In this document: positions 2,863 to 37,695 of the stretch, in pieces
Position numbering within the stretch: position 1 is the stretch's first letter
Layout of the letters: each line of letters begins with the position of its first letter
Assembly: GCF_947568905.1 (NCBI RefSeq)
Contig: NC_079172.1
Coordinates: forward strand, 40,486,001 to 40,550,000
DNA from: Ostrea edulis
Taxonomy: Eukaryota
Direction of reading: 5' to 3'
DNA length: 64,000 bases
The notes under the pieces: generated by a model
What the model saw: only the letters and a program-made list of their open reading frames with translations
Told to the model about the DNA's origin: nothing
Database searches by the model: none
Translations under genes and position numbers: made by a program

Positions 2863-15529
<12,667 letters not shown>

Positions 15530-15907
15530 GTCGTACTGTAATGAAAGTAATGGACTATACCATCGAACAATTCTTCACGAGGCATACTACAGTTATTAGA
15601 TAGATTAGAACAAATCAACAAAATTACTTGGATGGAACTAGGAACTAGAAGCTTTTAGATGGAACTACAAGTTTTTACATGAACTCTGACAATGCACATG
15701 TTTGTCTGCATATAGCGAGTGGGGACAGTCAGTGTGATAAAAATGACTAAAACTACAGAGATCTATCATGTGTAAACTGTCTTTTTTATATACAGAGTGA
15801 ACAAAATTTCATGGTTGGTTTCTATTCCAATATTCCTGATGCAGATTTTTTATAGATTTAAATGGAAAGTATCGGAAGGTAAAGTAAAAACTTTCAAATG
15901 TAGTTAA

Positions 15908-16050
15908 TTCTCAAGGTGGTGTGGCAAATGTAGGTGATTCTTGAGGTGCCGTGGCAAATGTAGGCGATTCTCAGTCGGTCGTGGCAAATGTAGGCGATTC
16001 TCGAGGGGCCGTGGCAAATGTAGGCGATTCTCAAGGTGCCTTGGCAAATG
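15908..16050. repeat. 30-bp minisatellite (~5 copies) downstream of the R3HCC1 stop
   Basis: Unit approximately GGCAAATGTAGGCGATTCTCAAGGTGCCGT. Confidence 0.85.
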
Positions 16051-18416
16051 AGGTTGTGAAAATAGTAGTGTGTTGAATATAGAGAAACAAGCTAATAGAA
16101 GCATAATAATACTGTTTATTGTAAATTTGCAGAAAGTGTTCAACATTCAGATTTACGTAGTGTTAATCTTGGGTTATATTTCACACTTAAGAATGCTGTA
16201 ACTGGTCTCTATTTTATCATTCATTTTTTCTTCTATTGTCACGCAGTCAAACTGCTTATGTTGTTTCATATACAACTGTCGGATGAATGTTATATATTTA
16301 TTTTATCTGATCGTTTTCAAACTGCATAAAATGTAACACCGATTAGCATTTACCATGATCTACGAATTGTTCGCGACAAAAACGACAAGCCTTTTAATAT
16401 CTACTGCATAATCATTGCATTCAATGGAATTTGTTGTTAAAATACACATATTTTATTTATCAGAAGAGGAGATGGAATCTGGTGATTTTAGAAATGAGTG
16501 ATTAACTGTACCGGTATGAGATCATCTATCACAAAATAAAAAATTTTGTAAAAAATGGATGCTATTCTGTTGTTATTAGATGAAATCAGCACCAAACAAG
16601 AGGCCCTCAGTGAAATAATGTTACAACTACATTGAACTGCATATAGTGTGGGTCCATTTTGGGGCCCAAAGCACTTGATGACACTGATTTGACATGTTGT
16701 TGAGAAGGAAATTTGTTTGAAAACTTTATAGTACCCCTTCCCTATACCTTAACAAACTTGAATTCACACAGCCAGTTCATAGTTTACCTGGAATTCATGG
16801 TAAATGATAGACATATCATTCGTTCCAGTCAGGATAGAAGTGGTGAAGAAATACTTCAGCTTTGAAAGTCACTCAATGTTGTGACATACATGTATAAGGG
16901 ACTGAAGAATACTGAGACCCAAGAATGAATTCTTGTGAGTGAGAGAGAGAAAACTGGTAAACCTTTTTTATTAATGAATCTGTTCTTTATTCAAGTTTTA
17001 AACTTTGGTATTCAAACCAACCAAATACATGTTGTCGTTTTTTATCCTATGTCGCCATTGACCCCTTATGATATCCTCTATGTCGACCCTGTCGCGTTAA
17101 TTGACATTTGACCTCCACAGCAAGTCCCGTTTAGATGTAGACTGTTACACCCCTATGTCATATGACCTACCAGTATGGTCTGTCTGACCTTGACCCATAA
17201 TGTTAGAAAGTGCAATAAGCATCTCGAAAAAAAGGAAGACTGGGGAGTTTTGACTAGGACACAGAGAATTTGATTATATTGGTACTGTTAACATTGGTCG
17301 CCATTCAGAACTCTGATCAATGCGTTTAAATCCCAGTTGTCTACTCGAGAAAATAAATGATAATTCAATGTTTACTTTATGTTAGGTCATGTAATTAATG
17401 TCTTTGGTAGGAGACTAGTTTAGCTGCCAAGCAGTTATATAAAAAAAATCGCAAGTTTTCTATACATTCCTATTCTTATAAGATTTGTACTTGTAGATTG
17501 TTGAATGCTTTCATGTTCGAAGTCGGACTAACCTAGATAACAAATCAAATGGCGTTGTTTATATTGTCCATTCAGCAATTACGAAATACTTAAAGCCTGC
17601 CACAGAAAAAAGCAAATCTAGGTTTTTGATCCGCCTCCGAACGGTATATCGCTACACAGAATAGTACCATGCACGTATTTAGGAGTGGATCCAACATGGT
17701 TTTTACTCGGATGATAGATTTTCTGGTGTTAATTACATGTACGATACAGTATTTTGTTCATGCTTATAGTTGTTTACTATGCTGTCGTTTGTAGAAAGTT
17801 GTCAGATTATTTTTCAAAATCATCTGTTGGGTTCCTTAGGTGTTCATGTAAAAAAATCAAGTTTCAACAATGTTTTTACAATATAATTGTAAGGTAATGA
17901 CTGTATTTCAAATTGAAATATATATATGTACATATATAATTATTCATTAAAAGTTCGGTAAAACTGCAATATACAACTGTAATAAATAGGGTATGTTTTC
18001 TACCTAAAATAAACACCCGATATGTACATGTAATCTATATCAGTCTATCAGAGATTCTGAATCCATCGTTAATTTTTTCCTTTTTTAATTGATATAAAGG
18101 TTTGTGTACATCACACTGAAAGACTATGGAATTTTTTATGGACTGTACGTACTATTTTCTATAGATTTTATTCAGTTCACGTATGATCATCTTTAAATGA
18201 AATTATTCTAATCACTTTAGAAGTCCTACAGGTGTAGAGCCACCCAGAGTAACTGAGATCGAATATGTTGAGACAGTGTCCATTCCTCTTTTATTGTAAG
18301 GTTTTTCCAAAGTTCCTCTTCCACTCAAGAAGACCCCAAAGGGTTCTAAAGATAAGTTCCGTAGTGGTTTGACTCCCAGGAATATTTACACGAAATACTG
18401 GATCCGCGCCGGTATT

Positions 18417-21400
18417 TTAGTACCGATGGGTGTAGGCGGAATATGTCCTATAACTGGGTCCATATATATGCTTGGCTTTGGTCCTCGTGTTGTCCATGGG
18501 TCTGAAGGCTCTGTCGTGTTTGTACTCCAACTCCTCCTCGTAACTGATGTCGTGTTCCTGTGACAGCGGCCGGAAGGTGTTGTACGGGGAGGCGGTGGCA
18601 GATGCTAGTTTGTTCCGGACTGCCGACAGGACTTCACTTGTCGTGTAGCCGGTACCAGCGTTCTGGTCCTTGGTTGGCAGTTCTAGTAACTCTGGAAAGA
18701 CAAAAGAATGATGACATTTAATTTTTTTTTTAATTGAAAGAAATATAATTTATTCTGAGTCATTTTTTTATCAGTTTGGTCGGTGTGGTATCCTTAGTAC
18801 CGGATTATTAGGATTAGATATGATTGATTCTCACACAAACAAGCATCAACATCGGTTGCATGCTACATATTTTAATCAAGGGCAATAATCCAAAATCACA
18901 AAGTTAACAGAATCTTTGCGACGATGTTACAGTCAGAACTTCTTTTTTTTTATTCATGAATAAGGTATTTGCTGGAGGGGGTATCTTTAAAAACAACCAC
19001 ATGTTTAATTTTGAATGTCACTTCCTTAAGAACGATATCGTGAACTTGAATAAGATTAAATCAATGTTGTTTTTAAATGACGAAAATGGATTTACATTTA
19101 TACATGGTAGCTTTTGAAAAGAAAAAAAAACCCAAACATGACATTATCTTTTGTGTGCGAATTAATCATGTATCTAGAGTGATTGACAAGCAAAACGAAC
19201 ATGTTGCTATTCCCTGGGATATGTTATAGGTCTTCGTGGGAACATGGGGAAGAATTGAATACATTTAGCAAAGTCACATAGACTCCAATAATTGGACTTA
19301 ATTCGCATACAATACGACTGTAATTGTTTAAGCTGTTAAAAGTCCCCTGATCAAATAGCTTAAAATTTGCTGATACATGAATTTCATATCTATGCATTAA
19401 GTAGTTTATATCTTAATACGTCTGCCAAGAAGTTAAGACAGGGTTTTCTCGTACCGTCCCACTGTATGTAACAGTTCATAAGTTCAGTGCAAGATAACCA
19501 ATTCATTTAGGACGTCTTGTTTTTAAAGCCACACGGCACTAACTATTGTGTATTCACAAACGGGTGATAAACACATTATATCCTAACCCTGACGATCATC
19601 CGCCGACCCTCTGATCAAGAGATGCGTGAAGTAAATTCTTCCTTTTCATAAGCCCAGGGCTGGGGCTTCTGCTACTAACTTTTTGAATGCAAAACACTAA
19701 TGCTTTCTTCACTACCCTCACAATAACTTGTGTCCTGAGACTCACCCAAATCGGAATCCCGAGCTCCGTTGACACTGCCGAAGGACGTATCTCGGAGACT
19801 GGATGTCGAGCTCGTCATGATGGGTGTCCCCAACGTCTTCCCGCGCTTCACGGCATTTTTCAGCCGTTTTATTTCATCATCTTGGCGCTGTAAGGTTGCC
19901 CGGGCTGTTTCTAGGTCCGTCCGGAGGCGCGTGCATAACGCAATGGCACCCTTGGCTACGCAGGTTGCGGGGACAATCGAGGCTGATAGCGCACCTTGCA
20001 GTGTCTCTTCGTTGAGGAGAGTGAAATTCACAGTTTCTATCAGCTCTTGTCGCTGTTCCGGGGTTAGGTTGTCCCGTTCTGAAATTTAGTTTTCATCTGG
20101 ATTTAAAAATAAATCGATGTTTGAGAAGGGGACTAAATGTTGTTCAATTACTAGTATATGATAGAAAGAATCTCCTTTAGGGACTGCCCAATCTGTCCTG
20201 TACAAAGTTAATCTTTTACGAGTTCATTATTTCAACATTTTCTTCGTATGTATATTCATTTTTGTCTGAGACGGAAATAGTTTCTATTAGAGCCATGTTA
20301 ACAATATATCGGGCAATTGTCATTCATTGTTAAAACTTTATCAGATGACAAGGTCAAAACACTGAGACTTTTTTCAATGAATCTTTCGCCTCGTAAACGT
20401 TTTGTCTTTAAAAAACATTGTACATCGCTGAAATTTGTTACCCCTTGAATTTTGTTTAAACCTTTTCTAATCAATGCAATCTTTCTACTAAGCACAAAGT
20501 GGGGTCACGTTTGTGTGAACAGAATCTACACATGGAATTTGTTTTATCTATAAGAGTAAATACTTCTTAAGGCAAACACTTCGAAACTTTCCTCGTATTG
20601 ATTAGCAACACCGTATCGATCTCATGAAGGCAGTGAAACTAGTAGTTACGGCCACTGGCAAGTATATCGCTTGGGTTCAAATTTACTATTAAAGAGTACT
20701 CTTTAAATTCGAACCCAAACGATATAATTATCTGTGGACATTCATTGACGCTGTATCTTATGTAACATGTAGAAGGGGTTGTTTATTTCCACGTAGTTTC
20801 CAAATGCTGATCTTTTATTTACGAGAATTTATGATACATTATTTTATTGCACGGCACTGTAAATGATTTCAATGCATATCAAAGTGTGAAGTATAAATTA
20901 ATCTAAATACGTTCACTTTGAGGTTTAACATATACCTGGTTTGGCAAGGAATCAATGAAAAAGATATACATGTACCACCAAAAGTTGTTGTATACCTGCT
21001 GATAAAACATACTCCAGTATGTTGTACATTTGATCGTGGTTGCTTCGCGCATCCTTTGGTACAACAGTTGCTAGCAATTTGAACGTTTCTGCTGTGAGAA
21101 CACCCTTTCGGACCATCTCGGACATGTACGTATCGACAATACGACAGGCCTTTTCCATTTGTCCGTTTTCTGAACTACACGATTCTTCCACTATGTCTCG
21201 TAATAGGGATGGAGAGATGATACAGAGGTCTTCTGCAGACAGTGTGCTCAGTAGTTCTCCAGCAGATTTGATTAGAAGTTTTCGACATTTGCAATTATGT
21301 GATGTTGCAACTCGGATCACCTTTGTCAACCAATCAATCGTAATTACGTCACTGTACAACGAATCTTCTGGCAAGACCGTGATGATACTGTCTAAAACTT

Positions 21401-22163
21401 TGGCAATATCGGTTTTCTTTGGCGATTTCGCACGAGGGGATTTGGCGTGACCGTCGCCCGATTCACCACTTTGGGCTGATTTTTCTTCGGATTCCTCGCG
21501 GTCGATCACGACTGCAATATATGACGTAGATAGTTCTGCAAGTAACGTCGACTGAACCCCTTGGTCACGTGCTGATAGGATAAGCTTCATATACCAGTCC
21601 AACGGAAGACTCAGCAATGCTAATATTGTCTTGTCTTCTCGTCGGTCAGGCATTTGCTTCAAGATATTCGTTGGCGAGCTAAATTTTGTTGGTGGTTTTA
21701 GCCAACAATCAATTAAAGCTTCGCAGCAAATGTCGACAATACCGGAAACGTTAGCCAATTCTCCGACTGCAGACGCATACAGAAGAAGTGACGCAATGCA
21801 TGACGTGGACCTACTCATTTTAGTTGACGTGATGGTGTCATTGAAGAACTTTCCTGCCATGTCAATCAAGTTGCCTTCACCTTTCATCTGAAGAAATTCT
21901 GAGGCGCACCGTACTTGCACAATATTGTTTTTGGATAGATCTATCTTCATATTATAGCAGAAATCGGCCACAATGCTGAATATTTCGGGTCCCCCGGGAA
22001 AGCCCATTAATTCCACCTTCTTCACGTCTGCACTATGTGCCAGTTTGCAGAAGTACTCGGATTTCGCGTACAGCGGAAATTTGTGGAGCTTAAAGACCTG
22101 CTCGTCCACGGTCACTGTCAGGTCAGACAGATCTCCACTTTCACGAAATTTTGAGAAATCCAT
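18417..22163 (-). CDS. BTB/POZ + NPH3-domain + coiled-coil protein (NPH3/RPT2-like, NRL family), 591 aa
   Basis: Exons 22163-20996 (1168 bp), 20078-19746 (333 bp) and 18691-18417 (275 bp, TAA); GT-AG, phase 1/1, total 1776 bp. An in-frame TAA lies two codons before the ATG. Motifs LHKFPL, FPGGPEIFSIVADFCY, RCASEFLQM..EGNL, RIVDTYMSEM and DARSNHDQMYNILEYVL recall the plant NRL consensus. Coiled-coil-like LRTDLETARATLQRQDDEIKRLKN in exon 2. Confidence 0.85.
20652..20737. mobile_element. Short palindromic element, same family as 61229-61320
   Basis: Arms CCACTGGCAAGTATATCGCTTGGGTTCAAATTTA / TAAATTCGAACCCAAACGATATAATTATCTGTGG around a central AAAGAGTACTCTTT. Confidence 0.7.
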
Positions 22164-23067
22164 AATTGGTTATTTTTCCTTGAATTTCGTGTCTTCTGTT
22201 GTTTCAACAAAATAACATGTGTCGAGCACACAGAAATTACATTGACATGCCAGTTTCGTATCAATATGCACAGATATACTTATACTTATTTAAAATAACA
22301 CACTTTGTATGTCGGCGAGAACTCGCGATCAATATGTGCTTTAATAATCCTTCTATTATTAATCCAATTTTAATCGTCTACAAGGGGAATTGCTATTCCA
22401 TAACAACAGTAAAACGCATGCACCACTCTACTGGTTTGTTAACTCCCAACTTATACAATCAGGGCATGTTGTATACCTGACAAAAGTTTTGTTTACATGA
22501 TACGGGTATTTACAAAGCTGACCCGCGACTGCAGGCTTTAACACGATCGAACATTTACTCGGGTTTATTTCATTGAACACTAAACTGTGTACTAAATAAC
22601 TGAATAATTCATCTTTTTATGTTTAAATTACTTTGTTGCTATAGAAGTGATGTGCATGTCAGATAGTTTCGGTCCACCTAGTTACCGATGAAATAAACAC
22701 AAGTACCCAGTGGAAATGCATGTTTCTAATTTTTGGATTTAAAACAAAATTGTAAGTCGGTAGAACGCTCGCTTCTTGTGTAGTTTTAAAGTCTTCGTTT
22801 CTGAGAGTCGTCGAGGTCGCCCGTCACTCAGACTGAGACGGTCTGAGCTCAGACCACCTGTTCGGTCGTCACTCAGATTGAGACGGTCTGAGCTCGGAGC
22901 AACAGTCCGGTTAGGTTTCGCGGTAAAGTCCTGTACTTCAACCAAAAGCTGGAAACAATCCATTCAGAAGCGGTGACTTAGAATATGTTCCTTTAATAAA
23001 TTATTTAATGAATTATTGAATTTGTAATGTGTTCCTTTAATAAATTATTAAATCTTTTCCTTTAATA

Positions 23068-24328: not shown

Positions 24329-25409
24329 TATATTATCAAATGAATATACTATTATTTTAGTAACTGCACGACACTTCGCTTGGTCGAGCGTGCAACGTTT
24401 GTGCGAAACTTCATATAGATTTCAATGGAACTTAACAGGTTTTAAAAGTAATGTAAGTCACCGAGTCTTAATGATTATTGAAATTGAAAAATACATGTTA
24501 CACTATCCACACTGTAGGGGGGTGGGGGGCGAAAATTCTCCGAATTATTCGCGGGAGTTATCACACAACAATACAGGAATAATCAAATGAAAATAAATGT
24601 CCACAAGTTTAATTTTGATTCACAAAATGTAATCGAGATTCTTCTTTTGTTCATATCATTTAGATTGGTGTTATATAGTGAGACTATCCCTGCCCCCGGA
24701 AGACTGGCTATTATAGTCAAATTTCCACCCAAGGGAAATCACGCTATATAGTAAGAAACACCCCACCCAAACTATCAATAGTGAGGCTTCCCCCCTACGT
24801 ACTTGGTCTGGATTTTATTTTCTAGATTTCCACCGAAAGTCTGGCTATGACATTTAGTGAGTCATGCTCTTTAGAGGGGTGGCTACATGGGTATATCCCC
24901 TCACCACTAGTAGTGAAACTCCCCCTACAATACACATACGACGTGGTTGGCTGTAATTTCATCAATATCTTTGATGTATTGATTGAACTGGTAGGTTCTT
25001 TTATCTGTCGTTCAACTACTGAATTGAATGAGCTTATCAAGGATACGTGTTTGAATGAGATGTATCTTCAAAGGAATTTAAACCGAATTGAATTATATTA
25101 TCTGATATTAAGAATAAAGATTATTCCATAACATTACTGAAATCATTACACCATACACTGAAGTGAAAATATCCGTAATCAGCGCGTGTCATATGTCATT
25201 ATCAATGTCATTATTAATTCAATTATTGCACACTATACATGTAATTGAATATATGATATATTTATATCCATGACTGATATCTTAATGTATCAAGTCAAAT
25301 AAACCAAATGATATTTTTATCTCAAGTTTTGTTTCTGCCTTTTCAAGTAATTATACGTGTATCTTCAAATTCTTATTATGAAATATACTCTGTTGTCTAG
25401 ATTTTCGGG

Positions 25410-26060
25410 GGTGGGGGTGTTAATTTGTCTATAAGATGGGAGACATTTCGCTATATAGCCCTATTTCAGTGGGGTTAATGCTCCTAGTTAGCCAGATGTC
25501 CGGGGGTGGGGTGATAATTTGTCTATAAGATGGGAGACATTTCGCTATATAGCCCTATTTCAGTGGGGTTAATGCTCCTAGTTAGCCAGATGTCCGGGGG
25601 TGGGGTGATAATTTGTCTATAAGATGGGAGACATTTCGCTATATAGCCCTATTTCAGTGGGGTTAATGCTCCTAGTTAGCCAGATGTCCGGGGGTGGGGT
25701 GATAATTTGTCTATAAGATGGGAGACATTTCGCTATATAGCCCTATTTCAGTGGGGTTAATGCTCCTAGTTAGCCAGATGTCCGGGGGTGGGGTGATAAT
25801 TTGTCTATAAGATGGGAGACATTTCGCTATATAGCCCTATTTCAGTGGGGTTAATGCTCCTAGTTAGCCAGATGTCCGGGGGTGGGGTGATAATTTGTCT
25901 ATAAGATGGGAGACATTTCGCTATATAGCCCTATTTCAGTGGGGTTAATGCTCCTAGTTAGCCAGATGTCCGGGGGTGGGGTGATAATTTGTCTATAAGA
26001 TGGGAGACATTTCGCTATATAGCCCTATTTCAGTGGGGTTAATGCTCCTAGTTAGCCGGG
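25410..26060. repeat. 94-bp tandem array, ~7 essentially identical copies
   Basis: GTCTATAAGATGGGAGAC at 25427, 25521, 25615, 25709, 25803, 25897, 25991. Confidence 0.95.
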
Positions 26061-36138: not shown

Positions 36139-37695
36139 TACTACTCAAAATTTGATAAGGATCACTAGGTTATATGTGTGTAATTTACCACTAACATAAC
36201 AAAAGACATAAATTTGACTCAGAAACGTGTTTACTCAGGTTATGAATGAAAATTCATGAACGGCATGAACTTTTATCAATACGGAATGCTTGAAATCTGA
36301 TAACAACACCAAAAGGCATTTCATTACAAAAAGTTAACAGCAAACCAGAGAAAGAATTACACAGTTTTGGGGGATAGTCCATCATTACACTTAGTCGATG
36401 AAGTGTCAATACCGGGTATGGCCTCCCCTTACATCAATGACGGCTTGACAACGTCAAGCCATGCTGTCAATAAGCACCCGGATGTTTCCATTGGGAAGGT
36501 TGTTCCACTCTTCCACGAGGGCGTTTCCGAGCTCTGCCAAAGTCATGGGTTGTGCTCTACGGCGTGAAAGGGCAATCTGCAGCATGTTCCATACATGCTC
36601 AATCCGGCGAGCGCGCTGGCCAGTCCATATGGACAATTATCTCCTTCTGAAGGTACTGCTCCACCACCCTGGCGCGATGAGGACAGGCGTTATAATCTAT
36701 CAGGATGAACTCAGGGCCAACAGCACCAGCGTAGGGTCTGACGTAAACATCGAGGATCTCATCCCGGTACTGCACCCCCGTCATTGTTCCTCTCTCCAGG
36801 ACATGAAGATCTGTTCTTCCATCCCTGCTGATTCCACCCCAGACCATGATGGAACCACCACCATAGCGGTCATGTTCACTGATGTTGGCATCATGGAAAC
36901 GTTCACGTTGTCGTCGCCACATTCGGTGCCTCCTGTCTGTAAAGTCCAAACAATACCCGGACTCATCAGTGAACAGAACTTGAACCCAATCGTTCTGTGT
37001 CCAAGTGACATGATCTTCAGCCCAGTCCAATCGCTCCCGCCGGTGTCGAACAGTCAGAGGGACTCGAACACATGCCCTTCTCGAGTTGAGACCTGCATTC
37101 TGAAGTCGATTCCGTATCGTCTGAGTGGACACATTCACCCCCGAGGCGTTCAGGAGGTCGTTACGTAGGCTGGTTGCTGTCCAGAAGGGATGGCGTCGTG
37201 CCTGAAGAGCCACAAAATGGTCTTGGTGTTGGGTTTTCGACCTCTGACGACCACCCCCATGTCGATGTGCTGCTGTACCAAAAGTTTGCTGTCGGTTCCA
37301 GGCCCTGTTTACAACGCTCTGACTGACATTTAGTGCATTTGCAACGTCACGTTGTGAATAGCCAGCGTCAAGCATTCCAATACATCTGCCCAGTTGTTCT
37401 GTCGTCAGGCGACGCCTTACACGTTGAGGGGGCATTGTGTTGATAAACGTAGTGTAAACACTCAAGTGAGTTTGAAATTTTAGAAAGAATCAGACACCGA
37501 TGCCTGAGTGAAAATCGTGCAATGGTAGCAAAAGCATAAACTGTGATGAGAAACGCATTTCCCATGGCATGTAATGCACGTGCAAGTTTGTTGAAGACGG
37601 TTTTTATTTCACTTGGACACAATATTGCCAGTTATGCAGTTATTAATTTTTTAAACAGAAACATATCTATGATCCTTCTCAAATTTTGAGTAGTA
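36139..37695 (-). mobile_element. Full-length Tc1-like transposon, ~1557 bp
   Basis: TIR TACTACTCAAAATTTGATAAGGATCA versus TGATCCTTCTCAAATTTTGAGTAGTA (1 mismatch), with TA flanks. Confidence 0.9.
36406..37435 (-). pseudogene. Tc1 (DD34E-type) transposase with catalytic substitution and late frameshift
   Basis: MPPQRVRRRLTTEQ..., VLFTDESGY, VWGGIS, second catalytic motif DDNA(R)PH changed to DYNACPH. WPARSPD is followed by a short deletion that shifts the frame before IEHVWN. The terminal GGHTRY-TGA ends at 36406. Confidence 0.88.

What the first reader, a model, noticed from the sequence alone, without database searches (positions are those of the whole stretch)
18417..22163. Intact animal gene for a plant-type NPH3/RPT2-like (NRL) BTB-NPH3-coiled-coil protein
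Seen in sequence: a three-exon, stop-free 591-aa gene with GT-AG introns, lying between animal genes and bivalve-type repeats, so simple contamination is unlikely. Similarity extends well beyond a generic BTB. LHKFPL, FPGGPEIFSIVADFCY and RCASEFLQM..GNL match the NRL-type BTB (plant LHKFPL, PGG.EAFE..AKFCY, RCAAEYLEM..GNL). LPLDWYMKLI, LDSIITVLP, RIVDTYMSEM, VPKDARSNHDQMYNILEYVL and LTPEQRQELIETVN align in order with the NPH3 domain (plant K(L)VD.YL.E, P..AR..HDGLYRAIDIYL, LSE.E+..+C). Established: NRLs are CUL3 substrate adaptors acting with phototropins and PIN auxin transport, and are usually called plant-specific; animals lack phototropins. The plant C-terminal RxS 14-3-3/phototropin site is absent here (the protein ends RTYSAYTHRY). 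Inference: either horizontal acquisition from an alga/plant-lineage donor or an ancient family lost from most animals, now serving an uncharacterised CUL3 pathway. One 1168-bp exon holds BTB plus most of NPH3, which fits intron-poor entry but does not prove it. Automated pipelines may already label such bivalve proteins with Arabidopsis names, so the novelty would lie in origin and function.
Basis: partly seen in the sequence, partly recalled or inferred. Interest (0 to 1): 0.85.

Follow-up and report, generated by a model that had tools for sequence, protein, structure and literature searches.

The report
Oyster gene for "plant-only" NPH3 protein
The flat oyster has a working gene for a BTB-NPH3 protein, a family that the literature calls plant-specific, and the same family is inherited across sponges, soft corals, worms, molluscs and acorn worms, so it is old in animals and was not recently borrowed from plants.

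Summary
On the minus strand, exons 22163-20996, 20078-19746 and 18691-18417 (GT-AG introns) give a stop-free 591-aa protein. It is identical to Ostrea edulis LOC125660391. cDNA-like contigs remove exactly these introns.

- **Domains:** Pfam finds a near-complete NPH3 domain (E=9e-20, 71.8 bits against a cut-off of 27) and a BTB domain.
- **Homology without the BTB:** profile-profile comparison gives E=1.7e-29 between animal and plant NPH3 regions.
- **Fold:** the model's best match is a plant BTB-NPH3 cluster (TM 0.58 over 421 residues).
- **Selection:** strong purifying selection (dN/dS about 0.05 against Saccostrea).
- **Context:** the gene order DuoxA, this gene, then a third gene is shared with Saccostrea.

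Recent transfer from a plant or alga is refuted. Homologues occur in molluscs, annelids, a nemertean, flatworms, rotifers, a bryozoan, hemichordates, an octocoral and homoscleromorph sponges. In the tree, all streptophytes sit on one side of a 100/100 branch and all animals on the other. Molluscs and a hemichordate share both intron positions.

The deeper origin is unresolved. It could be an ancient eukaryotic family with many losses, or one very old transfer between kingdoms. Function is inferred only: a dimeric BTB scaffold, possibly a CUL3 adaptor, working without phototropin. Databases already hint at this family, but I found no paper on it, and one from 2024 says metazoans lack it.

The parts
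22164..22227 (-). 5' UTR (minimum extent)
   Evidence: The spliced contig of run X1 reaches 22227. The ATG is at 22163-22161.
20996..22163 (-). Exon 1 CDS (1168 nt; residues 1-389 plus 1 nt). It holds the BTB domain and most of the NPH3 domain.
   Evidence: The GT donor lies at 20995-20994. The joint 20078|20996 is seen in contigs of X1 and X7.
21879..22157 (-). BTB/POZ domain coding part (residues 3-95)
   Evidence: Pfam PF00651, E=4.5e-12. The model's residues 1-114 align to solved BTB domains at Z about 15, rmsd 1.5-1.8. The motifs LHKFPL, PGG..F..FCY and RCA.E.L.M..GNL are shared with plants.
20996..21617 (-). NPH3 domain, part in exon 1 (residues 183-389)
   Evidence: Pfam PF03000. hhalign of the post-BTB region against plants gives E=1.7e-29.
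20079..20995 (-). Intron 1 (917 nt, phase 1, GT..AG)
   Evidence: The position and phase are shared with Saccostrea, Argopecten, Haliotis and the hemichordate Ptychodera.
20664..20725 (.). Small foldback (MITE-like) element inside intron 1, with very many copies in the genome
   Evidence: Inverted arms at 20664-20684 and 20705-20725 with 2 mismatches. Depth is about 1080 against about 4-6 in DNA run X3, and contigs break there.
19746..20078 (-). Exon 2 CDS (333 nt; residues 390-500). It holds the end of the NPH3 domain, the long helix and the start of the tail.
20011..20078 (-). NPH3 domain, part in exon 2 (to residue 412)
   Evidence: Pfam match to residues 183-412 of P0002.
19846..19968 (-). 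Long helix, a candidate coiled coil (residues 427-467)
   Evidence: AlphaFold helix 427-467 at pLDDT about 90. The heptad pattern is weak.
18692..19745 (-). Intron 2 (1054 nt, phase 1, GT..AG)
   Evidence: The joint 18691|19746 is seen in X1 and X7.
18417..18691 (-). Exon 3 CDS including the stop (residues 501-591). This is a disordered tail with conserved short motifs that ends ...YSAYTHRY.
   Evidence: pLDDT is below 50 over most of it. The motifs VLSA.R.KLA, YNTFRP, EHDIS.E.E..K.DR.FR and ...RY-COOH are conserved across molluscs. The tail has dN/dS 0.054.
18302..18416 (-). 3' UTR (minimum extent)
   Evidence: The X1 contig ends at 18302 with adapter-like letters. X7 contigs further downstream (17503-18116) may mean a longer UTR.

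Best explanation
This is a real, transcribed and selectively constrained Ostrea edulis gene (LOC125660391). It encodes a BTB, NPH3, long-helix and disordered-tail protein. It belongs to an animal clade of the NPH3/RPT2-like (NRL) superfamily that was already present in the last common ancestor of sponges and bilaterians. That clade has been inherited vertically, with losses in several large groups: no vertebrate, arthropod, nematode or echinoderm member was seen. It is the sister group of all streptophyte NRLs, not a branch inside them. How it probably works is inference, not shown. The BTB domain dimerises. The helices after it form a BACK/3-box-like extension of the kind that CUL3 adaptors use. 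The NPH3 core is an all-alpha solenoid that binds partners. The conserved C-terminal short motifs recruit or regulate cargo. Together these would make a dimeric cortical or trafficking scaffold, possibly a CUL3 substrate adaptor. It must act without phototropin and without the plant RxS/14-3-3 switch. The ultimate link to plants is unresolved. It is either descent from a very early eukaryote with many losses, or one transfer between the stem lineages of streptophytes and animals before sponges diverged.
For: Gene model and expression: (both introns removed in contigs of X1 and X7). Identity: 100% to the O. edulis protein; chromosome record with a DuoxA neighbour. Domains. Homology of the NPH3 region without the BTB: eumetazoa against plants E=1.7e-29, sponges against eumetazoa 3.7e-37, sponges against plants 3.3e-17. 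Fold: where the best Atlas match is a plant BTB-NPH3 cluster at TM 0.58 over 421 residues, against about 0.35 for BTB-BACK-Kelch clusters. One search agrees by language-model features (score 0.96). Taxa: (nine animal phyla including Porifera and Cnidaria; Chara, Mesotaenium and Spirogloea on the plant side). Tree. Streptophyta is one side of a branch at 100/100 (length 0.93), sponges are a clade at 100/100, molluscs at 92/84 and Ostrea+Saccostrea at 100/100. Rooted on the plant branch, sponges are sister to the other animals. Shared intron positions and phases in four molluscs and Ptychodera. Animal genomic context for the octocoral gene (FGF neighbour) and the sponge genes (among 7tm_1 genes). 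Microsynteny of DuoxA, this gene and a third gene in Ostrea and Saccostrea. Purifying selection: dN/dS 0.052 overall and below 0.08 in every region. CUL3-adaptor-like architecture: model residues 1-220 against vaccinia A55 BTB-BACK bound to CUL3 (Z 15.6, rmsd 3.1, 181 aligned) and 1-303 against KBTBD2 in CRL3 complexes (Z 15.1).
Against: Function is wholly inferred. No binding, localisation or tissue data were available. In my alignment a hydrophobic-x-Glu triplet is seen in the RPT3-like plant row only (IYE); the oyster (KLAHSAD) and the other plant rows lack one. That this triplet contacts CUL3 is my recollection, not tested. The within-animal topology is imperfect. Octocoral and hemichordate sequences group at 100/99, and rotifers and Bugula sit near the base on long branches. 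Only 150 of 1967 hits of the exhaustive search could be seen, and about 30 were named. Members in other eukaryotes therefore cannot be excluded, nor can absence from chordates and ecdysozoans be proven. The tree is unrooted, so 'animals are monophyletic' depends on placing the root on the plant branch. The dS of 1.2 is near saturation.
Confidence: 0.85

Rival explanations
1. Recent horizontal transfer. A bivalve or mollusc ancestor acquired an NRL gene from a land plant or green alga, for example from food or a symbiont.
For: Pfam NPH3 is otherwise known from plants. Published statements call it plant-specific. The first exon is large and intron-poor.
Against: Homologues are present in at least nine animal phyla including sponges. 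The streptophyte clade excludes all animals at 100/100. Identity to plants is only about 25%, against 33-36% to the hemichordate, annelid and nemertean proteins. Introns are shared with a hemichordate. The mollusc subtree broadly follows the taxonomy.
Confidence: 0.02
2. One very ancient transfer between kingdoms. The family arose in either the streptophyte stem or the animal stem and moved once to the other, before sponges and eumetazoans split and before the Chara/Zygnematophyceae/land-plant split. After that it was inherited vertically in both.
For: Every one of the 150 best hits that I could name is either an animal or a streptophyte. None of the named hits of the word-indexed search is a fungus, a choanoflagellate or another protist, although two EukProt rows there stayed unnamed. 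Vertical descent from a common ancestor of plants and animals would need many independent losses. With midpoint rooting, sponges group with plants, which would fit an animal-to-plant direction.
Against: Absence from other eukaryotes was not established, because 1817 weaker hits were unseen. Neither kingdom nests inside the other. No vector was found: pattern scans of viral and prokaryotic collections were negative. The midpoint root is unreliable with such unequal branches.
Confidence: 0.4
3. Contamination or misassembly. Plant or algal DNA was assembled into the oyster scaffold.
For: None beyond the plant-like domain.
Against: The gene lies on a 75.6-Mb chromosome record between animal genes. 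The same gene order is found in Saccostrea. Several DNA runs from more than one study hold 90-100% of the sampled words of the stretch, and contigs of one of them, X3, cover the gene and its flanks. GC content is the same as in the flanks. An oyster high-copy repeat lies inside intron 1. Orthologues exist in more than 15 mollusc genomes.
Confidence: 0.01
4. It is an ordinary animal BTB-BACK(-Kelch-less) protein whose helical region only mimics NPH3.
For: The first roughly 220-300 residues superpose on BTB-BACK structures. The NPH3 core is a generic-looking alpha solenoid.
Against: There is no Pfam BACK hit, whereas NPH3 scores 71.8 bits. The profile-profile E-value against plants is 1.7e-29 over 323 columns without the BTB. 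Forty-one columns are conserved in at least 75% of both animals and plants. The Atlas match to plant NPH3 is TM 0.58 against about 0.35 for BTB-BACK-Kelch.
Confidence: 0.02

Closest known systems
Plant NPH3/RPT2-like (NRL) family (Arabidopsis NPH3, RPT2, NPY/MAB4, NCH1, DOT3, NRL5)
   Same: The order of parts is the same: N-terminal NRL-type BTB, NPH3 domain (Pfam PF03000, nearly full length), a long helix, then a disordered C-terminal tail. The BTB motifs LHKFPL, PGG..F..FCY and RCA.E.L.M..GNL are shared. So are the NPH3 positions LP(264-265), D.Y(344/346), P..R...D(369/373/377) and P426. The predicted fold is the same.
   Different: It belongs to a separate clade that is sister to all streptophyte NRLs, at about 25% identity. 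It has no C-terminal R-x-S-x-S-COOH phototropin/14-3-3 site, which RPT3-, NPY1- and DOT3-like plant sequences have (role of the site: PMC8531357). Instead it carries animal-specific tail motifs ending ...RY-COOH. Its host lacks phototropins and PIN transporters (established knowledge). Intron positions differ.
CUL3 substrate adaptors of the BTB-BACK type (KLHL11, KBTBD2, SPOP BTB-3box, vaccinia A55)
   Same: The BTB fold plus the following helical hairpins superpose on BTB-BACK/3-box modules solved in complex with CUL3 (Z 15-15.6, 170-230 residues aligned).
   Different: There is no Kelch or MATH substrate domain. The helical region continues into the NPH3 solenoid. There is no Pfam BACK match. 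CUL3 contact residues were not verified.
NRL5 as a reported NPH3-domain GTPase that binds RAB and VAMP72 proteins (Sci Adv 2024, PMC11313873)
   Same: It has the same domain. The reported partners (RAB and longin-VAMP families) also exist in animals (established knowledge), so a trafficking role could carry over.
   Different: That paper states that this type of GTPase is 'not found in metazoans'. The presence of the domain here contradicts that statement, though activity was not tested. The modelled domain is all-alpha, has no strands, and its 50 best PDB matches are generic helical-repeat proteins.

Membership tests
NRL (BTB-NPH3) superfamily | NPH3 domain (Pfam PF03000) above the curated cut-off | tested here: met
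   71.8 bits against a cut-off of 27, E=9e-20, profile positions 7-254 of 258.
NRL (BTB-NPH3) superfamily | N-terminal BTB domain of the NRL type, directly upstream of NPH3 | tested here: met
   PF00651 at residues 3-95. NRL-type BTB motifs are conserved with plants.
NRL (BTB-NPH3) superfamily | Homology of the post-BTB region that does not depend on the BTB | tested here: met
   hhalign of animal against plant post-BTB alignments: probability 99.8, E=1.7e-29, 323 columns.
NRL (BTB-NPH3) superfamily | Same predicted fold as plant members | tested here: met
   The best ESM Atlas match is a plant BTB-NPH3 cluster, TM 0.58 by query, 421 residues aligned. No NPH3 structure has been solved.
NRL (BTB-NPH3) superfamily | C-terminal coiled coil | tested here: inconclusive
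   A 41-residue helix at 427-467 is predicted with confidence. The best heptad register has only 6 of 13 strongly hydrophobic a/d positions.
Plant (streptophyte) NRL clade, phototropin/AGC-kinase regulated | Branches within the streptophyte NRL radiation | tested here: not met
   All 20 streptophyte rows are on one side of a 100/100 branch, and the oyster and all other animals are on the other.
Plant (streptophyte) NRL clade, phototropin/AGC-kinase regulated | C-terminal RxS phosphorylation and 14-3-3 site (Ser third from the end) | tested here: not met
   It is absent from all 23 animal tails examined. It is present in the RPT3-, NPY1- and DOT3-like plant rows and one Glycine row.
Plant (streptophyte) NRL clade, phototropin/AGC-kinase regulated | Interaction with phototropin or AGCVIII kinases | not testable with these tools
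   That animals lack phototropins is established knowledge and was not searched here.
CRL3 substrate adaptors | BTB followed by a 3-box/BACK-like helical extension | tested here: met
   VIA-align gives Z 15.6 to A55 BTB-BACK with CUL3 over model residues 1-220, and Z 15.1 to KBTBD2 over 1-303.
CRL3 substrate adaptors | Physical binding to CUL3 (including the hydrophobic-x-Glu contact) | not testable with these tools
   No complex prediction or assay was available. The oyster loop reads KLAHSAD, with no such triplet. The role of the motif is from my memory.
NPH3-domain GTPases (as reported for NRL5) | GTP binding and hydrolysis by the NPH3 domain | not testable with these tools
   The model is all-alpha with no strands, and its 50 best PDB matches are generic helical-repeat proteins. 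An assay is needed.

The most novel reading that the evidence does not exclude
The NPH3 domain is not a plant invention. Streptophytes and animals are the only holders, linked by a single transfer between kingdoms more than 600-700 million years ago, before sponges split from other animals and before the Chara/Zygnematophyceae/land-plant split. Its ancestral job, a BTB-dimerised cortical or trafficking scaffold, predates and is independent of phototropin signalling.
Probability: 0.35. Interest if true: 0.85.

Novelty: new variant of a known kind. Interest (0 to 1): 0.68.

Why it matters
Papers on the NRL family call the NPH3 domain plant-specific (Stogios 2005, PMC1257465). [quoted passage not shown] This oyster gene is one member of a conserved and selectively constrained animal clade that runs from sponges to hemichordates, so that premise is wrong.

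This matters in three ways:
- **Ancestral function becomes testable.** The phototropin-independent function of the NPH3 domain can now be studied in animals, in tractable holders such as Macrostomum, Capitella, Owenia, oysters or trematodes.
- **Plant functions can be sorted.** It helps tell which plant NRL activities are ancestral (CUL3 adaptor, membrane association, RAB/VAMP trafficking) and which are plant add-ons (the RxS/14-3-3 switch).
- **An evolutionary puzzle.** The patchy distribution over streptophytes and some animals poses a clean question: an early eukaryotic family with massive loss, or a very old transfer between kingdoms.

Parasitic flatworms (Paragonimus, the schistosomatid Heterobilharzia, a monogenean) hold divergent members, and I saw no vertebrate member. 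That may interest parasitologists.

Tried and rejected
- **Pattern scans with the animal alignment:** alignment A1 found no relative in IMG/VR viral contigs or in 185,579 prokaryotic genomes. These scans used BTB-motif patterns only, so sensitivity is low and they are not proof of absence.
- **Atlas search leaving out PF03000 clusters:** no usable hit.
- **Paper searches:** NPH3 with oyster, with animals, with invertebrate groups, and 'root phototropism protein' with bivalve names. None found a paper on animal NPH3 proteins.
- **Earlier notes of this scan:** nothing relevant.
- **Shared intron as evidence of common descent with plants:** rejected. The Eutrema intron lies 4 nt from bilaterian intron 1 but in phase 0 rather than 1, and Chara has no intron there.
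- **Rooting:** no usable outgroup exists, since only the short BTB aligns to other families. The tree is therefore read unrooted.
- **Solved-structure sequence search with the NPH3 profile:** only designed helical repeats were found.
- **PDB-wide structural search of the NPH3 core:** only generic helical-repeat matches at Z of 9.5 or less, below the level that means anything for helical repeats.
- **Heptad count for the coiled coil:** inconclusive.
Full report
**1. Is the thing there?**

Yes. The minus strand between 22163 and 18417 carries three exons: 22163-20996, 20078-19746 and 18691-18417. Both introns are GT..AG and phase 1. The spliced CDS is 1776 nt and gives 591 residues with no internal stop, ending RTYSAYTHRY.

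The search for homologous proteins returns a 591-aa protein that is 100% identical, 'uncharacterized protein LOC125660391 [Ostrea edulis]'. Its gene sits on the 75.6-Mb record OX387712.1 of assembly GCA_947568905.1. The window is therefore flat-oyster chromosome sequence.

**2. Is it expressed and correctly assembled?**

I laid contigs of four public runs on 17500-23000.
- **Run X1:** one 1994-nt contig is about 2.5% divergent and comes from a different coded organism. It ends in adapter-like letters. It joins 18302-18691 | 19746-20078 | 20996-22227, which is both predicted introns removed exactly.
- **Run X7:** this is the same sample as DNA run X3. It has contigs with the joints 20078|20996 and 18691|19746, the first of them (the one shown in full) with no mismatch, and no cover of the introns.
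- **Run X3:** its contigs cover 17500-20692 and 20677-23000. They break only at a small foldback repeat in intron 1 (arms 20664-20684 and 20705-20725), where depth is about 1080 against 4-6 elsewhere.

Several DNA runs from more than one study hold 90-100% of the sampled words of the stretch. GC content matches the flanks. Contamination and misassembly can be set aside.

**3. What does it encode?**

- **Pfam on the whole protein:** NPH3 (PF03000) at E=9e-20, 71.8 bits against a curated cut-off of 27, residues 183-412 on profile positions 7-254 of 258. BTB (PF00651) at E=4.5e-12, residues 3-95. There is no BACK or Kelch hit.
- **BTB left out:** I cut the BTB off alignments of eumetazoan, sponge and streptophyte proteins and compared the profiles.

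| Comparison of post-BTB regions | E-value | Columns aligned | Probability |
|---|---|---|---|
| Eumetazoa against plants | 1.7e-29 | 323 | 99.8% |
| Sponges against eumetazoa | 3.7e-37 | 326 | 99.9% |
| Sponges against plants | 3.3e-17 | 304 | 98.9% |

- **Conserved positions:** forty-one columns keep the oyster residue in at least 75% of both animals and plants. They include LHKFPL, PGG..F..FCY, RCA.E.L.M..GNL, LP (264-265), D.Y (344/346), P369, R373, D377 and P426.
- **Full-length AlphaFold model:** built from 19 animal sequences, mean pLDDT 74, confident over residues 1-467.
- **Best ESM Atlas match:** a plant 'BTB/POZ At5g48800-like' cluster in which 100% of members carry NPH3, at TM 0.58 over 421 residues. 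BTB-BACK-Kelch clusters reach only about 0.35. Language-model features agree (score 0.96 to streptophyte NPH3 clusters).

The gene passes that test.

**4. Anatomy of the protein**

- **Residues 1-114:** these superpose on solved BTB domains at Z about 15 and rmsd 1.5-1.8.
- **Residues 1-220 and 1-303:** the first superposes on the vaccinia A55 BTB-BACK module bound to CUL3 (Z 15.6, rmsd 3.1, 181 aligned). The second superposes on KBTBD2 in CUL3-RBX1 complexes (Z 15.1, about 231 aligned). The BTB is therefore followed by a 3-box/BACK-like helical extension, as in CUL3 adaptors.
- **NPH3 core modelled alone (residues 180-432, pLDDT 88):** an all-alpha solenoid without strands.
- **PDB-wide structural search of the core:** only generic helical-repeat proteins, at Z of 9.5 or less. 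That is below what is meaningful for helical repeats, and all 50 listed matches are generic helical-repeat proteins. No NPH3 structure has been solved.
- **Residues 427-467:** one long helix follows. Whether it is a coiled coil is undecided.
- **Tail (468-591):** it is predicted disordered but is not free to vary. It has dN/dS 0.054. Motifs conserved across molluscs include VLSA.R.KLA, YNTFRP, EHDIS.E.E..K.DR.FR.LD and a terminal ...Y.x.RY-COOH. The terminal motif recurs in the annelid Owenia and the rotifer Adineta.
- **Plant RxS site:** the plant R-x-S-x-S-COOH site is phosphorylated by phototropin 1 and binds 14-3-3 proteins (PMC8531357). In my set it is present in RPT3-, NPY1- and DOT3-like plant sequences and one Glycine sequence. 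It is absent from all 23 animal tails.

**5. Selection and synteny**

Against the Saccostrea echinata orthologue (90% protein identity), Nei-Gojobori dN/dS is 0.052. By region it is 0.016 for the BTB, 0.074 for NPH3, 0.040 for the helix and 0.054 for the tail. dS is about 1.2 and so near saturation. Of the 36 listed differences between the X1 contig and the window inside the CDS, 26 are synonymous.

Both oysters have the same local order and orientation: DuoxA, this gene, then a 636/648-aa gene on the other strand. Argopecten and Haliotis have other neighbours within 10 kb.

**6. Who else has it?**

The word-indexed search lists BTB+NPH3 proteins in these groups:
- many bivalves;
- gastropods: Haliotis, Gigantopelta, Patella, Batillaria;
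- the nemertean Lineus;
- the annelid Capitella;
- the flatworm Macrostomum;
- the hemichordates Ptychodera and Glandiceps.

Plants begin only at E of about 1e-20 and about 25% identity.

The exhaustive profile search gave 1967 hits, of which 253 were at E of 1e-30 or better, and listed 150. I named about 30 of them through cluster look-ups and two further searches. These added:
- Octopus;
- the annelid Owenia;
- the bryozoan Bugula;
- the rotifers Adineta and Brachionus;
- the monogenean Cichlidogyrus;
- the trematodes Paragonimus and Heterobilharzia;
- the octocoral Dendronephthya;
- the homoscleromorph sponges Oscarella and Corticium, with many paralogues.

On the plant side the look-ups named Chara, Mesotaenium, Spirogloea and Taxus.

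NCBI's pipeline already gives some of these animal proteins Arabidopsis-style names:
- 'root phototropism protein 2-like' (Gigantopelta);
- 'At5g48800-like' (Haliotis);
- 'DOT3-like' (Mya);
- 'phototropism 2-like' (Octopus);
- 'At3g08660' (Dendronephthya).

No vertebrate, arthropod, nematode or echinoderm protein appeared among the named hits. An older survey of 17 genomes, which looked at metazoan, Dictyostelium and Arabidopsis genomes among others, also found BTB-NPH3 only in Arabidopsis (PMC1257465). Sponge, trematode and monogonont-rotifer members fall below Pfam's NPH3 threshold. They are tied in by the animal profile and, for the sponges, by hhalign as well.

**7. Phylogeny**

I built an IQ-TREE tree (LG+C20+F+G4 by PMSF) with 54 rows and 531 columns.
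- All 20 streptophyte rows sit on one side of a branch with 100/100 support and length 0.93.
- Inside that clade, streptophyte algae and land plants are reciprocal clades, each at 100/99.
- All animals are on the other side.
- Sponges form a clade at 100/100, flatworms at 94/99, molluscs at 92/84 and Ostrea+Saccostrea at 100/100.
- If the root is put on the plant branch, sponges are sister to all other animals.

The fit to animal phylogeny is not perfect. The octocoral group joins the hemichordates at 100/99. The long-branched rotifers and Bugula sit near the base.

Neither kingdom is nested in the other. That excludes a donor inside crown land plants or inside the sampled streptophyte algae. 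The tree is unrooted, so it cannot tell vertical descent from one very old transfer.

**8. Gene structure**

I mapped exons exactly.
- Ostrea, Saccostrea, Argopecten, Haliotis and the hemichordate Ptychodera all have three exons with two phase-1 introns.
- The first intron falls in the codon right after the ...LEYVLSA / ...MLFQT block in all five. The second falls in the poorly aligned tail in all five, within 17 alignment columns. This structure therefore goes back at least to the protostome-deuterostome ancestor.
- The Dendronephthya gene (next to an FGF gene) and the Oscarella gene are intronless. The Oscarella gene lies in a tandem array of paralogues interleaved with 7tm_1 receptor genes.
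- Chara and Eutrema have introns elsewhere. One Eutrema intron lies 4 nt from the bilaterian one but in another phase, and I do not count it.

**9. How it most likely works (inference)**

- **Shown:** the domain composition, the fold, the constraint and the transcription.
- **Inferred from the plant family:** plant NRLs work as CUL3 substrate adaptors (NPH3 with CUL3 ubiquitinates phot1, Roberts 2011, cited in PMC8531357). They are plasma-membrane-associated scaffolds regulated through the C-terminus (PMC8531357). NRL5 is reported to be a RAB/VAMP-binding GTPase in trafficking (PMC11313873).
- **My reading:** the oyster protein keeps the BTB, the BACK-like extension and the NPH3 solenoid, but replaces the plant regulatory tail with animal-specific motifs. 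The most likely function is a BTB-dimerised adaptor that uses the solenoid and tail motifs to bind partners at membranes or in trafficking, possibly handing them to CUL3. I put this at about 55% for a CUL3-linked adaptor and 30% for a CUL3-independent scaffold or trafficking role; the rest is unknown. Phototropin-style light control is very unlikely.

**10. Novelty**

The gene and its Pfam domains are already in public databases, so the sequence itself is not new. What seems unrecognised is the phyletic spread and its consequence. My paper searches found no work on animal NPH3 proteins. Papers I read call the domain plant-specific or 'not found in metazoans'.

I class it as a new variant of a known kind: an animal sister clade of the NRL family with its own tail motifs. 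The deep origin stays open. Of the hits I could name, only streptophytes and animals appear, which favours one ancient transfer on parsimony. But 1817 weaker hits were unseen, so I give the transfer about 0.35-0.4.

Noticed in passing
window 20664-20725 (intron 1): A small foldback element with 21-nt inverted arms and 2 mismatches. Its depth in DNA run X3 is about 1080 against about 5 for the flanks, and contigs of all four runs break there. It is probably a very abundant oyster MITE.
   Followed up: partly
window 25399-26000 (may run further): A tandem array with a 94-bp unit, at least 6.4 copies and 99% matches, between the NPH3 gene and the DuoxA gene. A second array with a 30-bp unit and 5.2 copies lies at 15895-16050.
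   Followed up: no
window 36602-37465 (-): An ORF with Tc1/mariner-type transposase domains: HTH_Tnp_Tc3_2 at E=6e-18 and a weak DDE_3 hit. It is a transposon remnant or copy.
   Followed up: no
C-termini of P0002, P0004, P0009, P0012, P0028, P0031, P0049, P0116 (Owenia), P0133 (Adineta): These proteins end in an aromatic/basic motif, ...Y-x-x-x-R-Y-COOH, shared by molluscs, an annelid and a rotifer. Hemichordates and the octocoral share an upstream ...(F/Y)WP(Y/F)... motif. The function is unknown. It sits where plant NRLs carry the RxS/14-3-3 site.
   Followed up: partly
L009 (Eutrema NRL gene), intron before codon 448, against window intron 1: A land-plant NRL intron lies only 4 nt from the conserved bilaterian intron 1 on the protein alignment, at phase 0 against phase 1. 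Chara has no intron there. This is probably coincidence or intron sliding.
   Followed up: partly
L007 (Oscarella lobularis OX382158.1, 798-820 kb): Three intronless BTB-NPH3-like paralogues lie within 14 kb, interleaved with five 7tm_1 receptor genes. Corticium also has at least four paralogues with neighbouring LOC numbers. This is a lineage-specific tandem expansion in homoscleromorph sponges.
   Followed up: no
P0134, P0136, P0152: Parasitic flatworms hold divergent members of the family: the schistosomatid Heterobilharzia, the lung fluke Paragonimus and the monogenean Cichlidogyrus. No vertebrate member was seen among the named hits.
   Followed up: no
tree: The octocoral clade (Dendronephthya plus two unnamed sequences) groups with hemichordates at 100/99 instead of outside Bilateria. 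No other cnidarian class appeared among the named hits. The cause could be an artefact, hidden paralogy or a transfer within animals.
   Followed up: no
window 17503-18116: The RNA-like run X7 has contigs downstream of the 3' end seen in X1 (18302). This may be a longer 3' UTR, an alternative polyadenylation site or another transcript.
   Followed up: no
window 7976-9172 (+): A 398-aa ORF with no Pfam match. It lies inside the range of the neighbouring 636-aa gene on the plus strand, which has no Pfam hit on record.
   Followed up: partly
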